Shown: in pieces, positions 39,328 through 48,918 of the stretch | Numbering within the stretch: the first letter of the stretch is position 1 | How the letters are laid out: each line of letters begins with the position of its first letter | Assembly: GCA_964057225.1 (NCBI GenBank) | Contig: OZ059897.1 | Coordinates: 9,610,001 to 9,674,000, forward strand | DNA length: 64,000 nucleotides | Source of the DNA: Auanema rhodensis | Taxonomy: Eukaryota; Animalia; Nematoda | Direction: 5' to 3' | Made by a program: the position numbers and the translations under genes | Notes under the pieces: generated by a model | Told to the model about the DNA's origin: nothing | Databases searched by the model: none | Seen by the model: only the letters and a program-made list of their open reading frames with translations

Positions 39328-42209
39328 ATGTCCCAAGTTCCACCAAGGAAAATTCCTAGAATTATATCACGGGTGAAGAATAAATCAGAACAGAAATTGG
39401 ATTGCAATGGTAATAATTGATAAAGTGAAAAAAACAGTATCGAACATGCTGTAAGCGCAAGATGGTGACGAAATTTTCAAAACGCTTTTATACCTTGAAA
39501 ATAAAAGTTATCTACTGTAGGATCATGTATAAATAATTCTTAAGTTCGTAATAAGAAATATATATGATTATACAAATGTAAAGCAACGAACAGGAAATAA
39601 TATATACTGAGTTATCATGTGAAGTTTTGAATATTTTCAAATTGCAGATCGTAGCGATCTTTTACGGGGAGATCATACAGACTTAGTTAGGAATGAACAA
39701 TTAGTTGATGAATTAAATTCCGAGAAAGTGGTTATAAGAGATGGTGTTGTTGTGGCAGTTCAACATTTGGATAAAGAAAGACCGGTAGGTAGAATTAATG
39801 TACTGTTTTATTCATTTTTGAACTTACCGATAGTTTAGTTCATTTTCATCTGGTTATTCACATTATCATTTTTTAACGTAATGTATTGTATTGTAATTGT
39901 ATTTGTTCTTCAGCATACTTCGAGCCATTCCAGTAGGAGAGTTATTATTGATGCAGGCCTGCCTATTCAAGAGCATGATATGTACACTGAAACTCCTCTT
40001 CCTGGTTAGTAATTTACAGAAATAATATTTCTGAATCTAATATTTTTGAAGGATGTGCAGATGAAGTTGAATCTTACCCTTGTAAATACTGTCCCAATCA
40101 CGTATTCTTAACTACATTAGGATTAGAGAAGCATGCTCGAGAATTTCATATTGAACAACTACAAGAGGTTTGCCCTCAATTTTTATTTTCCTACTGAAGA
40201 ATTATAGATAATGGAATATATGAATACAATACAAGAAGAATGGATAAGAAGAGAAAGAGAACGTGCTCGACAACGTGAACGAGCACAGTTAGCTAAAATA
40301 CGGCAAGAGTCAATAGCCCATGCTGCGGTTCGAAACTCTGCGTTACGACTAGGTGATATGGAAGTTGGGCAAGGTAATCATCAACTGTTTTTTCGAAACA
40401 AAGAAAGAAATTATTTTGTTCGATATAATTTATTCAAGTTTTAACAATTATTTTCAGAGATATCTATATCAGACCAACCGGAAGAGGAGCATTTCGAAGC
40501 TTGCAGGATATGTACCCTTTTGATTAACTCCAACCACCCCACTGCAATGGAAAATCACTTGAGAGCACACAAAAAAAACGACGAACTGCGAAGCCAATTG
40601 TTAGCCGAATATGGCTCTGAGGTATTGGAAATTAATCTTACATCGTTCAAATGTTTCTCCTAGATTGTTGGCAGGTTAACGTGTCATGATTGCCATTTGG
40701 TTTTCACGGATGACAGTAAATTAGCTTTGCATATAGAACATACACATGTAAGAAGGCGGAGATTTGTATGTAAGTGGTGCGGGCATCTATGTGCTTCCAT
40801 GACCGATTTGAATAATCATAAAGCTGATGTTCACGCAATGCCAGCTTGTCAGAGTCGACAAGAAAGAGCGGTATATAGTTTTGAAGAAACTTTTTAGATA
40901 CTGCAATCCTATTTTAGTTAATAATGAGAAACAATGCCATAAGAGCACGAGCTCGTTTGCGAGCAGAACAATTTATTGAGAGATGTTACGGACCTGGTTC
41001 AGAAGATGCTGTGTGCAGGTGATATTTCTTTAGTATTTTATTTTAAATAATTCCTTGTTAGAACTAACTGTGAAGAATGTGGGCTTAGGTTGTTGCGACC
41101 ATCCCTACTCATAAGGCATATGCTGAGAGTTCATTCCAAGGAATCCTTCTCGTGCAAAGTTTGTAATTTTACAATTTTTTCGTAATAGAATATGTTTTAG
41201 ATTGAAACTTCGGGTGTTGAACCATTCCGGATAGAAGTAGATCAGGCTAGGATACGATGGGTTTGCTGTGAAGCTAAATATATTGACAAGTTTGTTTATG
41301 ATAATATGCAAAATTATGCTTGTTTATTGTTTCAGACAGGAGTTTAATTTCCACAGGCGAACAGAGCATCTAGAAAAAATGTCTCAAGCTCAGCAATCTG
41401 AAAAACAAATTATGCCTCAAGAAGCTCCAGCGATTAATGGTAACTTGTTTTTAGTTTTGGTGAGGGACATTCCTTTTTTAGATCTTACCACCTCTGAACT
41501 GCCTATTCAACCAGGAACAGCAGCGTACACTGGCCAAATTGTACATAACGAAGATGGATCAATGCAGGTAGATTTTCAGTTATTATATTTTTATTTATTT
41601 ATTTTGTTAGGTTGTTCTCCCTGAAGGTATTGATACTTCTGGCGATATCTATGTTGTTATGCTGGATGAGAATATGGATATTTCAAAGGTTATCTAATTT
41701 TTTCATTTTATTCTAATTATTCAAGTTTCAGAATCCTCAAACTTCATATGATGTGAATGCTTCTTCTTCCCAAGAGGCTATCCAAATTCAAGGCGAACAT
41801 CAAATGACAATCGACGACGAGGTAAATTGCTTTAATGGTATGATGTTTGAATATCTTTTCAGGCCGATACTGTTGCTATTACTGAAGAACAATACCAACA
41901 ACTACGAGAACAATATGGAGATGATCTCAATGATTTGGTATTTGCTTGTATGTCTATAACAATTATCATCTATTTTTCCAGCAAATTGTGTTTATGAGTG
42001 ATGACATTGATCAAGGCGGACATATTGTGCCGCATCAGCACGGTGCCGATATGGATGTCATCGAATCAAATAGTATGCAACAGACCCACCAACATTCTCA
42101 CTCACATTCTCACTCTCATAATCCTCATCCTCAAAATCTTAACATTCAACAACACAATTTAGTGTCCCAACAACCCGAACTAACAAATGAGGAAATTTTT
42201 GAGCCGTGA
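39328..42209 (+). CDS. Multi-C2H2 zinc-finger protein (about six fingers) with an acidic, Gln/His-rich C-terminus
   Basis: Fingers: CKYCPNHVFLTTLGLEKHAREFH; CRICTLL...MENHLRAH; CHDCHLVFTDDSKLALHIEHTH; CKWCGHLCASMTDLNNHKADVH; CEECGLRLLRPSLLIRHMLRVH; and the atypical WVCCEAKYIDK/QEFNFHRRTEH. An acceptor TTACAG lies 7 nt before the ATG. Confidence 0.87.
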
Positions 42210-42773
42210 AAAGTTACATGTTTCATATTTAGTATATTTATAAGTTATAACTCTTCATAACCTAAAAATGGTCGACACGATCTCTTCTTACTTCGCCTCA
42301 CGGGTGTGATCTTTCTGTAAATCTGAATCGAAGTGATATCCCAATTAATCAACCGGTAGTGAATGAATGAATATTCGTGAACCCACGAATTTTATCACGT
42401 TTGAATAAAAGTAAGAGTATAACATTTTTTGAGCGTTGTAATTCAGTGGATTAATGGAAGCAACCAATTTGCCTGTTTATTGTATGCAACCGATCTGTGG
42501 GTCATATAAGTAGCAAGCTTGTCATATTAAACATTTATTACATTACAAAGAAATTTCCATTCTCGAAAGATGGTATCACAGAACTGAGAAAAATGCTAAA
42601 ACATATCAGCACATGATATATACAGCTAAATGTTTTGGATTAAAAAGATACATATAATAATTATGGCCAATTAATTTCACCGGATATGAATAATACCCGG
42701 ATATTCATCTAAAGCGATATGGAATGTAATCGAAGTTTGAGATTATTTCATAATGAAATTATGGCGGGTGAAG

Positions 42774-43262
42774 TTAAATAATGAGGTGAGACTTCAAGTT
42801 ACCGGATTTTTTTCGAGGTGGGAGATCTGAACAGCTAAGAGGCAGAGGACCGAGAACATCAATACATTCTTCTGAATTGCTTGGAGATATCTTGATTACC
42901 TGAAAATAGCTTATAGAACAAGTATCGGAAAGCTGGTGAAGGTAGGACATAGGCTTTGTTCTTTACGAGCGCGTGCTTTGTGCTTTACAAACACTAACAA
43001 GGACACAAGTGTAAGCTCAATCAAAGGGAAATTATAGAATAACAAAGGCAAATGCAAAACGGAGGAATAGGATACAACACTATGTATAACTCTACCCACC
43101 ATCTGCTCATCTTCAAATAGCTGAAAAAAATTAGTTTGCTTATCAATCTGTTGAATCTACATTGAATCTACTTCAGGTACACAATGATAAACTCGAAAAA
43201 AGGAAAGTAAAATCATGATATCTTACCCCACTATGACAGCTTGTTCTCAGTCCTCGTGGTAG
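42774..43262 (-). other. Candidate spliced stop-readthrough extension of shk-1 (43262-43227, 43120-43100, 42899-42774)
   Basis: After the TGA the frame continues CTA CCA CGA...AGT GGG to a phase-0 GTAAGA donor. Two TTTTCAG acceptors follow, each opening an in-frame segment. Confidence 0.55.
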
Positions 43263-46200
43263 TCAGCTGTCCGTCGAGCCCATTCGATCTCCATTTATGG
43301 AATCATTATCACCTCCTTGTTCAATGTCATCGACATCTTTCCCAACTGAACGCATAGTAGCCAGACGATTTTCTTGACGATAGAAGTGTTTGAAGTTGGC
43401 AACCTACGAAAAGGAAATAAATCATATCATTGTAACCAAGTTATGATGTTTATAAAGAAGAATTCTACTCACGATGATAGGAACGGGCAAAGCCAATGTG
43501 AGCACACCAATTAATGCACACATTGAACCAACAATTTTTCCCTGTGGACTAATAGGTACTAAATCACCATATCCAACAGTTGTCATTGTAACCTATAACC
43601 ATGTATAACTTGAGATACTGGCATAATATTTAACAAACATACCAGTACAAACCAAAATGAAGCTGGAATAGAAGTGAATTTTGTATTCGGATCTCCCTGT
43701 TCTGCAAAATATATTCCGGAAGCAAACAGAACAAGAGCAATAGCCATAAAGAATATGAGCAGACAAAATTCTTGTACTGATGCTCGGAATGTTTTTCCCA
43801 GAATTTGCAAGCCAACAGAATGTCTGTGCATATCGAAAAGCGTATTAAATTGTGAAAGGCAAAACATACCGACTCAATTTGAAGATTCTGAACACTCGAA
43901 CCAATCTTAATACTCGAAGTACGGCAAATGACATTGACGAACTCGATTTATTCATGTCAGCCCTTAAAGCACTGATAACATATCAGTTGAGGAATCACAA
44001 CACGATATTTAAATTAAAATGAATATAACTTACCAAAATAAATTCACGAAAAATGGAGCTATGGCAACAAAATCAATAATATTTAAAAATGATGTCATGA
44101 AAGAATATTTTGAAGGACAACTGATGAATCGTAAAAATAATTCTGAAATGAAATTTCATATAAACTGATGTAAACATTGTTTATACTGACCTATGGTAAA
44201 CCATAAGATACAAACAAGCTCAATCCAGAAGAATGGATTATTAAATCGTCCATCTTCCTTTTCAGTAGAATCTGATGGATGTAATACATCAATAGACGGC
44301 ATGGTTGGTGATAATACTGATGATGGTACAGTTTCCCAACAGAATGAAACAATTGAACTGTAATTTCATCACATGAAGCACTTATGAGGATGATATGTTA
44401 ACTTACACGATAATAACCGCAATCGAAATAAAAGCTATAACTCTTGCTGATAACGATGAGTCTGGATATTCCATCAATTCCCATATTCGCCTCATAGTAG
44501 GATTATGAGGCATCTTAGCTTCAGGAGGTTTCTCGTATCCCTCAGCAATCCAAAATTCTTCCAAAAGCTCTTCTCCCATCTACAAAACTCGAGTTATTTG
44601 AACTTTTAGAATCTAATTTATGTCAATAGTTTGCATCGATAATAAATACTTACCTGATAAAAGTGCATTTCGGAGAGAAAAACATCAATAGGCACAGCTT
44701 CTGGTCGCTTAACTCGGCCATGACTCTGATAGATATAGAGAATCGATTCAAATCTAAAACAAATGAATAAAATAATTAGTAGTGAAATGACATTGATTTA
44801 AAATAAAATCTCTGATAGATGTATATTTAATGTTTAAATCTTGAGATATTCGATTTAACACTTTATCCAACAACCCCTCTCCTCTTTATCGCAAACATTA
44901 TATATTTTATATAATGTATATAAAAATTGAAAGAATATAATTTCAAAAAATTTTATATAATTCATATAAAGCATAAGAAAAACTATATATTTTCTATTAT
45001 TCAACCCTTATTATCAAAGTTTTTGAAAGGTTAATCAGGTTAGCCTAAAAGTGATATATTATAAAAGATAATATATATATTTATAATTTTAATATCTATT
45101 AAGTTCATTAATCATTTTGATTGTCAGAAATCAACTGGTATTCTTTAAATATTGCTCTATAGTGTTTAGAGGCAATGATTATATGCAAATCGTAGGACCT
45201 CACATAGCAGAGCAACAGCTGACAGATGAATCGCTTTTATGTGATCAATCACATGGAGTTTAGACTAGATAACTAAACGTTTTTACACTTTTGATATTCC
45301 AATAGAAAAAATTATGTTTGAATTCTCTTTCTCTCTCTCTCTTTCTCTCTCTCTCTCTTTCTCTCTTTCTTTCTTTCTTTCCCTCTCTTTTCACTCCCTT
45401 CTCCCCGCTTATCGTATAATCGAAATGTATAGTTTGACATATGTATATCAAGTAGTTTCTTTTCAAAACAAACTCACGTTGATCGATGACGGTCAAAGAA
45501 AAATTCTTTGGTATCTTCCACCCAATAATGTTCTCGTTTCGATCGATCACCAAGTAATGTATTTGGATATCTGAAAAGAAGCTCATGGAATAATTGAATA
45601 AACTATATCTTTACAGTTGTACTGTAAATAAATTAAATTATCTCAAATTTACCTTGCTAACGTGGATTCGAACGTTTGAAATCGCAAGCCTGACACATTT
45701 ATTGTAATAAGCTCATTTGATGAGAGGCTAAAATAGCAAAATTTGATGAATAAGAACTCTTTTCATCAGATATTCTTACACATGATCATAGAATGGAGTT
45801 CCTCGTTGAGGACTACTGCTCTTTTCATCATCATTCACCAACAAGATACCATTTGTCTCGTCCATAATAGGACGTCTGAAATAAGAAAAATTCAAATAGA
45901 ATGAATATAAATAACTTGATTAAAAATATTTTTGTTTTATTTATATAAATTTCATAAGTTACATTTCATAAGTACGAGTAAACATACATATATGCCTTTA
46001 TATGAAATTTATTGAATTTTGAGTATGATTTGCATAATAAGTCTGTATGCTAATTAGATATTTTGTGACATTTTTGACAAAAATTGTAAAGCTTCTTACT
46101 ACTATACTATTTAACAAAGTTTACTCACACGAACATCAACACCAATTATTTTTTAAATGTAAACATCGTTTGGTGTCATCATGTATCACAAAATCTTTTT

Positions 46201-48918
46201 AAAAAATTTGAAACATTCTCTGAATTCGTTTACAATTAGAATCTTGGATTTTCAGCAACCGCTGCTTCGTAGTACACATTTTGAAATGATGCTTTTACAC
46301 GAATTGCCACGAACAACCATTCTAGATAACTCTTGAAATTGAAGCGTCGCCAAGAGTCTTTTAAGTAAATTAAAATGGATTAAGCTTATATAAAGCGTCA
46401 TGAAGACAACTGTTTTTGTACAGCAGTAAAGTGGAAGTGTTTTAAGATTCCGGGATTATTAATTGATTACAAGAAAGCTAAATTGCTTTTATAATCAAAG
46501 AATTCATCTTTAAATAACTCTTAGAGTTGACTTACGAGAAAAAATCATGTATATCTGCGCAAACGGATGTCGAAAACATGACTTGAAATGGATAAAGAAG
46601 GGTAATAGCCTCGGCAAAACGAAGAAGATATGTATGTAGAATGGTGGATAACACATAGGTATAAGATACTTGTCTAACATAAAGGTGAGAGATATAGCAT
46701 GTATGTACATAAGAAATACAACATGAGACGAACAAACATGTGAGATACAATGTTTAAGAATTTTGAAGAGAATTTTTCAAAAAAATTGACAAGAAAAAAG
46801 TAAAAAAAAGGTTTCTTAAAATATCTCATTCGTTCATATGTTGATATAACATACTATAATATTATTCTTCAATCTTTCTTAACTTTGTTTGACAAGAGAA
46901 GGAACTGGTGTGGATATCAAGAATCTTTTTTTCATTAATATTCAAGCTTGATCTATTGTTGTTCCTCGAAACAATGTCCAATTTTTGTTCTCGATTAAAA
47001 TTTTAAGACAACAAAACAAATTGACGTAAAAGAGGAAGTATTAGATGTGCTTTCTGATGTCCACATGCATAGGCAATGTGTTCAAAACTTTAACAGCCCA
47101 TGTAGCTCAAGAACAGTTACTACTGTCTGTGTGTATGTGTGTGTGTGTGTGTTTGAGATTTTATCGGAAGTATCTTTAAGAAAAACGTAAAGCATCACAT
47201 TTAAATATCTAGTTAGCATATCCAGCTGGCACTTAGAAGTAAGAAAAAACAATTTGCTGACGTAAAAAGTTGAAGACAGATGATGTCTTAGACTTTGCAA
47301 ATCATTTAAACCATTAATATATTTAAGTTTTTAAAGAAATGCTATATCATATTACTGTTGTTAACATTTCGTGTATATCATTTGCAAAAAAAAATTGAAG
47401 AAAACAAATAAACAAAATAAAATCCTAAACGACATGAAAATAGTAAAATGTAACGTGTTTTTAGATGCTTTACTATATGTTATTATGTTTGAATTCTAGT
47501 TAATTCATTGCAAATTAAATTGAAACAATTAACAAAAAACAAGAGAAAAGTAGTTTCTAGTGAGAAATAAAAACAAATATTAGTTGTAAAAGATAATTGT
47601 AAATCCTCTTCATACCTGGATGCAACTTCAGATTCTGAGTTGTCCTGAGGTAAAGAATCTGACGGAACCTCTTCTGGTAATACATCCATCAAGAATGCGA
47701 TTACTTTTTAGGATTGTTTTCTTGCAAGAATTCAATTTAGGCAAAGAAACAAGAGGAAAAGTGAAACAACTGAAGCTGCGAGTGTTCAGGCTCATCCGGG
47801 AGGATGAACAGGCGGTGAAAATGACTGACATCACAGCTGCAGTCTCATCTCTCTTTTCAATTTTATCTCCCGAGTTTCTCTAGATCCCATACTAATCATT
47901 AGTCAACTCAATACGAAATCATGTTGCATTTCACGTTTCACATGAGTAAGCAACTGATTCTCATTTTTTTCGCCAACTCATCATATTACTAGACGAAGTT
48001 TGAGTAAAACACCAATACAATAAGCCTTTTATGTTTCAATATCGTCGGAACTCAAATAAAAAATTCCAAAAAAAGAGATATCAACTAAGTTTGATCGGTC
48101 GAGGCTATAAAGTATGGCTTGTTTGACGTGAGCATTAGATAAAAAACTCAAATACATGGTTAGCTGCTCATCTGGGATTTATCTCATTCAGCTATTAGCA
48201 GCATTTATGTGTATATGTTTACATTTTTTCATATTTTATGTAACAATATAAGTTATTTGCTAAAAGAGAAATATTTTCTTTCAAGTTTCAATTTTCAGAC
48301 CTTCCGGGACGACGTCTGCCAAACTTCCACATATTATGGTCACGTGAGCAAGTTCACATATAGAAATTTCGTTCGAGAAACTAATAAAAGAACTGAATAA
48401 ATTAAATTAATGTAATATAAAAGAAGATATATAATTCTATTAGTTATATAGTTAAAAAATGAATGAATATAACAAAGTAGTATTAAGATATACAGATGTT
48501 GAAGCATTGTTAACAGGAGTATATGAACTAATCTAAGCGTATTTGGCAAGATGCCGTGAAGCGGAATGAATTTTCCCCATCACCGTCATAAGCCCATATA
48601 GGACATAGTAACGATTTAAACGAAAGTCATTCTACACAGAAGTCATATTAAAAATCTAAAATAATCTTTTTTTTTGTTGTAAAATGATGAGATCGTGGAT
48701 ATAAATGTATAAGGACTGGAGATTGGAATGAATGAATGTCTTTAAAAGATTGCAAAGTTGAAAACATATAGAGAACTGAGAGAAAGAGTGGGAAAGAGTA
48801 AGAAATAGAGGCATGAAGACATATCATATATGCTTTTGAAAGTAAGTAAAACATAGAAAGGAGAGCGAGCCTCTCGTTCTCTCTTTTTCTCTATCTGGAT
48901 CTCTATCTCGTTCCCTCT

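What the first reader, a model, noticed from the sequence alone, without database searches (positions are those of the whole stretch)
42774..43265. shk-1 stop-codon readthrough candidate (UGA-CUA) continuing across spliced exons
Seen: the channel frame ends ...GSTDS-TGA, followed at once by CTA and 11 more sense codons (LPRGLRTSCHSG) up to a phase-0 GTAAGA donor. Two TTTTCAG acceptors then open in-frame segments LFEDEQM and VIKISPSNSEECIDVLGPLPLSCSDLPPRKKSGNLKSHLII*. An alternative donor would give ...MVGNQDISKQFRRMY*. Established: UGA-CUA is the best-known leaky stop context, and introns downstream of a true stop are uncommon. I recall C. elegans shk-1 being flagged as a readthrough candidate by comparative genomics, which needs checking. 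Inference: programmed readthrough adds a ~60-aa tail with a hydrophobic C-terminus that could change channel anchoring, since the short form lacks a Shaker-type PDZ ligand.
Basis: partly seen in the sequence, partly recalled or inferred. Interest (0 to 1): 0.75.

Follow-up and report, generated by a model that had tools for sequence, protein, structure and literature searches.

The report
Conserved spliced readthrough tail on SHK-1
A nematode Shaker potassium-channel gene ends at a leaky-looking UGA, and a further 60 codons, spread over three spliced exons, stay in frame and evolve like protein in ten nematode sequences, so some channels probably carry an extra regulated tail.

Summary

**In the window (minus strand)**
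- The Shaker/SHK-1 frame ends at TGA (43265-43263), followed by CTA.
- Twelve more codons run to a phase-0 GTAAGA donor.
- Transcript contigs from 4 samples of one study carry the TGA unchanged.
- Three of the four show exactly the predicted junctions, 43227>43120 and 43100>42899. An unspliced form is also present.

**Against the closest relative found, Auanema sp. JU1783**
- Introns are 38-49% identical.
- The 12 post-stop codons differ at 2 bases, both synonymous.
- The 41-codon tail exon is 80% identical, has no gaps, and its changes fall mostly at third codon positions (pN/pS 0.22, P=1.6e-4).

**Across the other taxa**
- The stop is TGA in all 10 sequences examined, counting two near-identical metagenome contigs once: Auanema, Necator, two further strongylids, Mesorhabditis, two Diploscapter-type sequences and two Caenorhabditis-type sequences.
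- The next codon is CTA (6), CGG (2), CTG (1) or TGG (1).
- A Gly-Leu-(Arg/Thr) motif follows, written with varying synonymous codons.
- Strongylid and Caenorhabditis-like cDNA contigs carry the open extension directly after the TGA.
- No SECIS element, conserved ATG or bypassing splice was found.

**Limits**
- Translation through the stop is inferred, not shown.
- That C. elegans shk-1 was flagged in 2011 is recalled only; I could not obtain that paper's text.
- The scan had not noted this locus before.

The parts
43266..43403 (-). Pre-stop part of the last channel exon (46 codons, VANFKHFY...GSTDS), directly after the S6 segment
   Evidence: The exon is joined to upstream exons in transcript contigs. 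It is 83% identical to Auanema sp. JU1783 with dN/dS 0.07.
43263..43265 (-). First stop, TGA, followed by CTA: the candidate leaky stop
   Evidence: Unchanged in RNA contigs of 4 runs. TGA sits at the same position in L001, L003-L009 and L013.
43227..43262 (-). Twelve post-stop codons, LPRGLRTSCHSG, ending at a phase-0 donor
   Evidence: 34 of 36 bases are identical to L005:7235-7270 and both differences are synonymous. The Gly-Leu-(Arg/Thr) motif is kept in all taxa with varying synonymous codons.
43121..43226 (-). Intron A (106 nt, GTAAGA...TTTTTCAG), downstream of the first stop
   Evidence: Joint 43120/43227 in X1, X3 and X4; an unspliced contig, 42871-43252, is also present. Identity to JU1783 is 42%.
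43100..43120 (-). 21-nt phase 0-0 microexon (LFEDEQM)
   Evidence: Both of its junctions lie in one contig. JU1783 has a 21-nt exon, PKEDEQM, at L005:7357-7377.
42900..43099 (-). Intron B (200 nt, GTGGGT...TTTTCAG). Its first 45 nt (43055-43099) are almost invariant and contain GUGUUGUA.
   Evidence: Joint 42899/43100. The first 45 nt are 96% identical to JU1783, against 44% for the rest of the intron. GUGUUGUA matches 7 of 8 positions of the UNC-75/CELF element (G/U)UGUUGUG.
42777..42899 (-). Tail exon, 41 codons in the channel frame
   Evidence: 80% identical to L005:7563-7685 with no gaps. Differences by codon position are 6/4/15; pS 0.49, pN 0.11; binomial P=1.6e-4. Homologous tails occur in strongylids, Mesorhabditis, Diploscapter and Caenorhabditis.
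42774..42776 (-). Second stop (TAA), the end of the extension
   Evidence: JU1783 stops at the same codon position with TGA. Identity falls to 65% and then 48% beyond it.
42534..42773 (-). 3' UTR of the extended form, with AATAAA at 42539-42534
   Evidence: Contigs reach 42546-42564. The AATAAA block aligns with JU1783.

Best explanation
This is the SHK-1 (Shaker/Kv1) orthologue of an Auanema-like rhabditid nematode.

**Proposed mechanism**
- Most ribosomes terminate at UGA 43265-43263.
- A fraction decode this UGA with a near-cognate tRNA, favoured by the UGA-CUA context.
- Those ribosomes translate 60 more codons: 12 in the same exon, 7 in a 21-nt microexon and 41 in a terminal exon, ending at UAA 42776-42774.
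- The result is a channel with a 61-residue C-terminal extension.

**Conserved features of the extension**
- A Gly-Leu-(Arg/Thr) motif just after the stop.
- A Ser/acid-rich patch.
- An invariant R-x-x-S a few residues before a mostly hydrophobic C-terminus.

These look like short regulatory or trafficking motifs.

**Shown:** the TGA is real, both downstream introns are spliced, and the frame is conserved with a coding signature.

**Inferred:** translation through the stop, its efficiency, and what the tail does.
For: **RNA evidence in the window's species**
- Transcript contigs carry the TGA and both downstream junctions.

**Window against Auanema sp. JU1783**
- Introns are 38-49% identical, the post-stop 36 nt are 94% identical, and the tail exon is 80% identical without gaps.
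- Tail differences are 14.8 synonymous against 10.2 non-synonymous where 30 and 93 sites are available. Differences by codon position are 6/4/15; P=1.6e-4.

**Across ten sequences**
- The stop is TGA in all ten. The next codon is CTA 6 times, CGG 2, CTG 1 and TGG 1.
- CUA and CGG are the known leaky contexts after UGA (PMC4132726).
- After the stop, Gly is written GGA, GGG, GGT or GGC. Leu is CTG, CTC or TTG. Arg is AGA, CGA or CGT.

**cDNA contigs**
- Strongylid cDNA contigs L009-L012 read straight from the TGA into a 51-codon open extension.
- The last 39 codons of that extension match a Necator exon that sits behind a TTTTCAG acceptor 1.7 kb downstream.
- Caenorhabditis-like cDNA L013 has 62 open codons. 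C. briggsae genomic DNA has 51 without an intron.

**Motifs and exclusions**
- R and S of the R-x-x-S motif are invariant in the 9 aligned tails.
- Rfam finds no SECIS element.
Against: - There is no direct evidence of translation: no ribosome profiling, peptide or reporter data.
- All RNA evidence for the window's species comes from contigs of one study. Contigs cannot show rare isoforms, RNA editing or transcript levels.
- Every exon boundary here is phase 0, so an undetected exon-skipping isoform could also put the tail exons in frame.
- The fourth base after the stop is C, not the G of the efficient mammalian UGA-CUAG motif.
- One species, Diploscapter pachys, has UGA-U.
- Tail divergence among strongylids is high (pN/pS 0.4-0.7 at saturated pS).
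- No significant RNA structure was found near the stop.
Confidence: 0.8

Rival explanations
1. The tail exons are ordinary alternative 3' coding exons. A splice variant that removes the TGA reaches them, for example by skipping the 177-nt exon 43227-43403 or by using a donor upstream of the stop. No readthrough is needed.
For: All exons concerned are phase 0-0, so skipping would stay in frame. Contigs can miss rare isoforms, and one joint was not listed.
Against: - The only junction seen into the microexon starts at 43227, downstream of the TGA.
- The 12 codons between the stop and the donor are conserved as protein, and no acceptor separates them from the TGA.
- The one plausible upstream donor (GGTGAT) is absent in JU1783.
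- Caenorhabditis-type sequences have the extension with no intron at all.
- Skipping would delete the conserved post-S6 segment.
Confidence: 0.07
2. The UGA is recoded by another route: either A-to-I editing to UGG (Trp) or selenocysteine insertion.
For: The stop is strictly TGA in all taxa. Shaker-family mRNAs are known editing targets, and an Rfam K_chan_RES match lies in the neighbouring exon.
Against: No SECIS element was found in the window or in six orthologous loci. RNA-derived contigs read TGA with no variant, although contigs drop minority variants. Strict TGA plus a following C is also the usual signature of readthrough.
Confidence: 0.05
3. The region is an untranslated, intron-containing 3' UTR whose conservation reflects RNA-level signals only.
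For: Two blocks are conserved more strongly than coding sequence: the post-stop 36 nt at 94% and the start of intron B at 96%. This shows that RNA-level constraint exists here.
Against: RNA-level constraint does not explain the third-position bias and gap-free alignment of the tail exon. It also does not explain synonymous codon turnover at conserved Gly, Leu and Arg, nor an open frame of 47-62 codons kept in ten taxa with different intron layouts.
Confidence: 0.05

Closest known systems
C. elegans readthrough candidates from comparative genomics (Jungreis et al. 2011, Genome Res 21:2096; five worm genes)
   Same: A conserved in-frame coding signature beyond a conserved TGA-C stop. From memory, shk-1 is one of the five genes. 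The C. briggsae orthologue examined here shows TGA-CGG plus 51 open codons.
   Different: That paper's text could not be read, so the membership of shk-1 is unverified. Here the extension is interrupted by two introns, including a 21-nt microexon. It is traced beyond Caenorhabditis to Auanema, Mesorhabditis, Diploscapter and Strongylida.
Vertebrate UGA-CUAG readthrough genes (OPRL1, OPRK1, AQP4, MAPK10; PMC4132726)
   Same: UGA followed by CUA, conserved across a clade. Extra nucleotide-level conservation over the 12 or so bases after the stop. Extensions that add short C-terminal motifs to membrane proteins.
   Different: The fourth base here is C, not G. The extension is longer and spliced. 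No efficiency has been measured.
Viral UGA-CGG / UGA-CUA readthrough class (alphaviruses; summarised in PMC4132726)
   Same: The nematode orthologues alternate between exactly these two contexts after UGA.
   Different: This is a cellular gene. No downstream structure was detected.
Drosophila/Anopheles abundant readthrough (PMC5100048)
   Same: A long neuronal gene with a TGA-C stop and a disordered-looking extension that evolves faster than the main reading frame.
   Different: Those screens tended to reassign second ORFs containing an exon break to alternative splicing, unless the stretch before the break scored as coding. Here that stretch does look coding.

Membership tests
Functional (programmed) stop-codon readthrough gene | An in-frame open reading frame beyond the annotated stop, maintained across species | tested here: met
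   47-62 open codons in ten sequences, while the other frames are closed.
Functional (programmed) stop-codon readthrough gene | A protein-coding substitution pattern in frame 0 downstream of the stop, including the stretch before any exon break | tested here: met
   Tail pN/pS is 0.22 with a third-position bias, P=1.6e-4. Both post-stop differences are synonymous, and synonymous codons turn over at Gly, Leu and Arg across taxa.
Functional (programmed) stop-codon readthrough gene | A conserved stop codon in a leaky context (TGA followed by C) | tested here: met
   TGA in 10 of 10 sequences and a following C in 9 of 10.
Functional (programmed) stop-codon readthrough gene | Other routes excluded: splice variant, downstream ATG, dicistronic message, Sec, editing | tested here: inconclusive
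   No bypassing junction, no conserved ATG and no SECIS element were found. Contigs cannot exclude rare isoforms or editing.
Functional (programmed) stop-codon readthrough gene | Direct evidence that ribosomes pass the stop | not testable with these tools
   No ribosome profiling, proteomic or reporter data were available.
Shaker/Kv1 channel (SHK-1 orthologue) | T1/BTB domain, six-TM Ion_trans core and the TVGYGD pore signature | tested here: met
   Exon-wise Pfam hits to BTB_2 (weak, below the curated cut-off), Ion_trans and Ion_trans_2. The exon translations show the pore motif. The nearest proteins are nematode SHK-1 and Shaker.
UGA-CUAG high-efficiency motif | CUAG directly after UGA | tested here: not met
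   The window reads UGA CUA C.
Selenoprotein gene | A SECIS element in the 3' UTR | tested here: not met
   No Rfam match at E<=1 in 42300-43500, nor at E<=0.1 in six orthologous loci.

The most novel reading that the evidence does not exclude
Splicing downstream of the leaky stop may choose which readthrough tail is made. The variable events would be inclusion of the 21-nt microexon and retention of intron A or B. An almost invariant 45-nt intronic element resembling a CELF/UNC-75 site could steer them. Recoding and tissue-specific splicing would then combine to set the C-terminal trafficking or phosphorylation motifs of a Kv1 channel.
Probability: 0.2. Interest if true: 0.7.

Novelty: new member of a known kind. 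Interest (0 to 1): 0.5.

Why it matters
Few animal readthrough candidates outside insects have strong support. A Kv1 channel is a tractable case, because both electrophysiology and genetics can be applied to it.

The comparison shows the extension is old, shared by Caenorhabditis, Auanema, Mesorhabditis, Diploscapter and strongylid parasites. It also shows the extension can be split by introns. Gene annotation would therefore label those introns as 3' UTR introns and miss the isoform.

The invariant R-x-x-S and the hydrophobic end give concrete residues to mutate in C. elegans shk-1.

Tried and rejected
**Literature**
- The 2011 paper that would confirm the shk-1 listing is not held.
- Full-text searches for shk-1 with readthrough terms, and for the other worm gene names, found nothing.

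**Protein and locus searches**
- The representative-protein search with the 46-residue pre-stop piece gave only 5 hits, all fragments. These still led to the orthologous loci.
- Look-ups for the Heterorhabditis, C. elegans isoform a and Haemonchus proteins found no contig, so C. elegans DNA itself was not examined.
- Direct tblastn of the window's tail against hookworm loci was uninformative. Homology appeared only through the strongylid cDNA and the multiple alignment.

**RNA structure**
- Folding and duplex tests of the two highly conserved blocks gave no significant structure.

**Rejected models**
- An independent small ORF starting at the microexon ATG was rejected. Strongylid and Caenorhabditis tails have no corresponding ATG, and the ATG-less post-stop codons are themselves conserved.

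Pieces were handled apart.

Full report
**1. Observation**

On the minus strand the channel frame ends ...GSTDS, then TGA (43265-43263), then CTA. Twelve further sense codons run to a GTAAGA donor after 43227. A TTTTCAG acceptor opens a 21-nt exon (43120-43100). A second TTTTCAG opens 41 codons (42899-42777), ending at TAA.

All boundaries are phase 0. The two other frames are closed in each piece. Shuffling gives about 0.027 for the three pieces staying open by chance. Exon-wise Pfam scans and the TVGYGD pore motif identify a Shaker-type channel.

**2. RNA evidence**

Four runs of one study hold this locus as spliced contigs, so they derive from RNA.
- The contigs join all the channel exons.
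- They carry the TGA exon without a single base difference.
- In three runs they contain both predicted junctions: 43227>43120, and 43100>42899 after the tool's cut adjustment. Both have GT..AG ends.
- A contig covering 42871-43252 unspliced is also present in all four runs.
- Coverage continues to about 42546, next to an AATAAA at 42539-42534.

Contigs give no levels, starts or rare variants.

**3. Relatives**

A search with the pre-stop piece, followed by a search with the best hit, found nematode SHK-1 proteins. Nearly all annotated proteins end at the same position. The closest is Auanema sp. JU1783, so the window comes from an Auanema-like rhabditid.

Loci or cDNA contigs were fetched for:
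- Auanema sp. JU1783 (L005)
- C. briggsae (L006)
- Mesorhabditis spiculigera (L007)
- Diploscapter pachys (L008)
- Necator americanus (L003)
- a second strongylid assembly (L004)
- a Diploscapter-like metagenome contig (L001/L002)
- strongylid transcript contigs (L009-L012)
- a Caenorhabditis-like transcript contig (L013)

**4. Conservation beyond the stop**

*Window against JU1783*

| Segment | Identity |
|---|---|
| Channel exons | 69-83% |
| Introns | 38-49% (one exception, see section 8) |
| 36 post-stop bases | 94% |
| Microexon | 81% |
| Tail exon | 80%, no gaps |
| After the second stop | 65%, then 48% |

- In the channel exons, synonymous sites are close to saturation (pS 0.70-0.83).
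- Both differences in the 36 post-stop bases are synonymous.
- In the tail exon, differences by codon position are 6/4/15. Synonymous changes number 14.8 on 30 sites. Non-synonymous changes number 10.2 on 93 sites. The binomial P is 1.6e-4.

*Across all ten sequences*

- The stop is TGA in every one.
- The next codon is CTA in six, CGG in two, CTG in one and TGG in one. CUA and CGG are the two contexts after UGA known from viral and vertebrate readthrough (PMC4132726).
- Three to four codons after the stop, every sequence has Gly-Leu-(Arg/Thr). Gly is written with all four codons, Leu with three, and Arg with both codon families. That is what selection on a peptide produces.
- In seven sequences the 12-13 post-stop codons end at a phase-0 donor. 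In C. briggsae the frame simply continues.

**5. The tail in other lineages**

The strongylid cDNA contigs read from the TGA through 51 open codons (L009:1659-1814). The last 39 of those codons match a Necator exon behind a TTTTCAG acceptor 1.7 kb downstream of the stop (L003:12123-12257, tblastn E 1e-7). They also match a candidate exon in L004. So the post-stop intron is spliced in strongylids too.

L013 has 62 open codons and C. briggsae has 51. Candidate tail exons follow good acceptors in Mesorhabditis and Diploscapter.

An alignment of nine tails (A1) shows:
- a Ser/acid-rich start;
- an invariant Arg and Ser three residues apart (RKKS, RSGS, RRPS and similar);
- a mostly hydrophobic end.

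Among strongylids the tail evolves fast (pN/pS 0.4-0.7). That fits a disordered region carrying short motifs.

**6. Mechanism and rivals**

Readthrough is the only model that explains a conserved peptide starting directly after a conserved stop with no acceptor or ATG in between. I give it 0.8.

- **TGA-bypassing splice variant.** Not seen. It would not translate the 12 post-stop codons. The one plausible upstream donor is not conserved.
- **Selenocysteine.** No SECIS element was found.
- **A-to-I editing of the stop.** Cannot be excluded from contigs.
- **A purely RNA-level role.** Does not explain the codon-position pattern.

Translation itself, its efficiency and the function of the tail are inferences. 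The R-x-x-S plus hydrophobic C-terminus resembles phosphorylation-controlled trafficking or class II PDZ-type signals. That is an analogy only.

**7. What is known**

Held papers confirm that a 2011 comparative study flagged five C. elegans genes, C18B2.6 among them. The paper itself is not held, and no held paper links shk-1 with readthrough. That shk-1 is on that list is therefore my recollection only.

If the recollection is right, this is the orthologue of a known candidate. What appears to be added here is:
- the spliced architecture, with RNA support in two lineages;
- the reach across Rhabditina including parasites;
- the conserved motifs.

Later screens tended to reassign second ORFs containing an exon break to alternative splicing, unless the stretch before the break scored as coding (PMC5100048). 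Here it does.

**8. Side observations**

- The last 15 nt of the microexon are identical to JU1783 and the next 45 nt of intron B are 96% identical to it, well above the level in coding sequence. The block contains GUGUUGUA, one base off the UNC-75/CELF element that activates upstream exons from downstream introns (PMC3627589). No significant fold was found. I read it as a splicing control element for the weak GTGGGT donor, with low confidence.
- Rfam's potassium-channel editing-signal model scores above its threshold on the S6 exon here and in the orthologues. This may mostly reflect coding conservation.

Noticed in passing
window 43055-43120 (minus strand): The last 15 nt of the microexon are identical to Auanema sp. 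JU1783 and the first 45 nt of the following intron are 96% identical (43 of 45), although synonymous sites elsewhere are near saturation. The block contains GUGUUGUA, a 7-of-8 match to the UNC-75/CELF element. No significant structure was found.
   Followed up: partly
window 43464-43577 (minus strand); also L005-L009 and L013: Rfam K_chan_RES (the potassium-channel RNA editing signal) scores 64 bits against a threshold of 51 over the S6-coding exon and 9 nt of the next intron. Several model pairs are non-standard, so the match may mostly reflect coding conservation. Whether an Ile codon is edited here is untested.
   Followed up: partly
window 43963-44033 (minus strand): This intron, before the S4 exon, is 74% identical to JU1783, against 38-49% for the other introns. 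It holds an exact GUGUUGUG and precedes a weak CTTTAAG acceptor, which suggests regulated splicing of the S4 exon.
   Followed up: no
window 41686-42522 (plus strand): A convergent neighbour gene with three small spliced introns and a His/Gln-rich reading frame. Its transcript contigs end at 42488-42522, only about 25-60 nt from the end of the channel transcript contigs (42546-42564).
   Followed up: no
window 45875 and upstream: The channel transcript contigs continue 5' of 45875 into sequence that does not lie within 41500-47400. Three different loose ends were seen, suggesting alternative 5' exons or promoters, as reported for C. elegans shk-1 isoforms.
   Followed up: no
L001/L002 (ENA metagenome contigs): A prokaryote-style gene call read the nematode TGA as Trp, producing a database protein (P0003) that runs through the stop into the intron. 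In this lineage the intron before the last channel exon is absent.
   Followed up: partly
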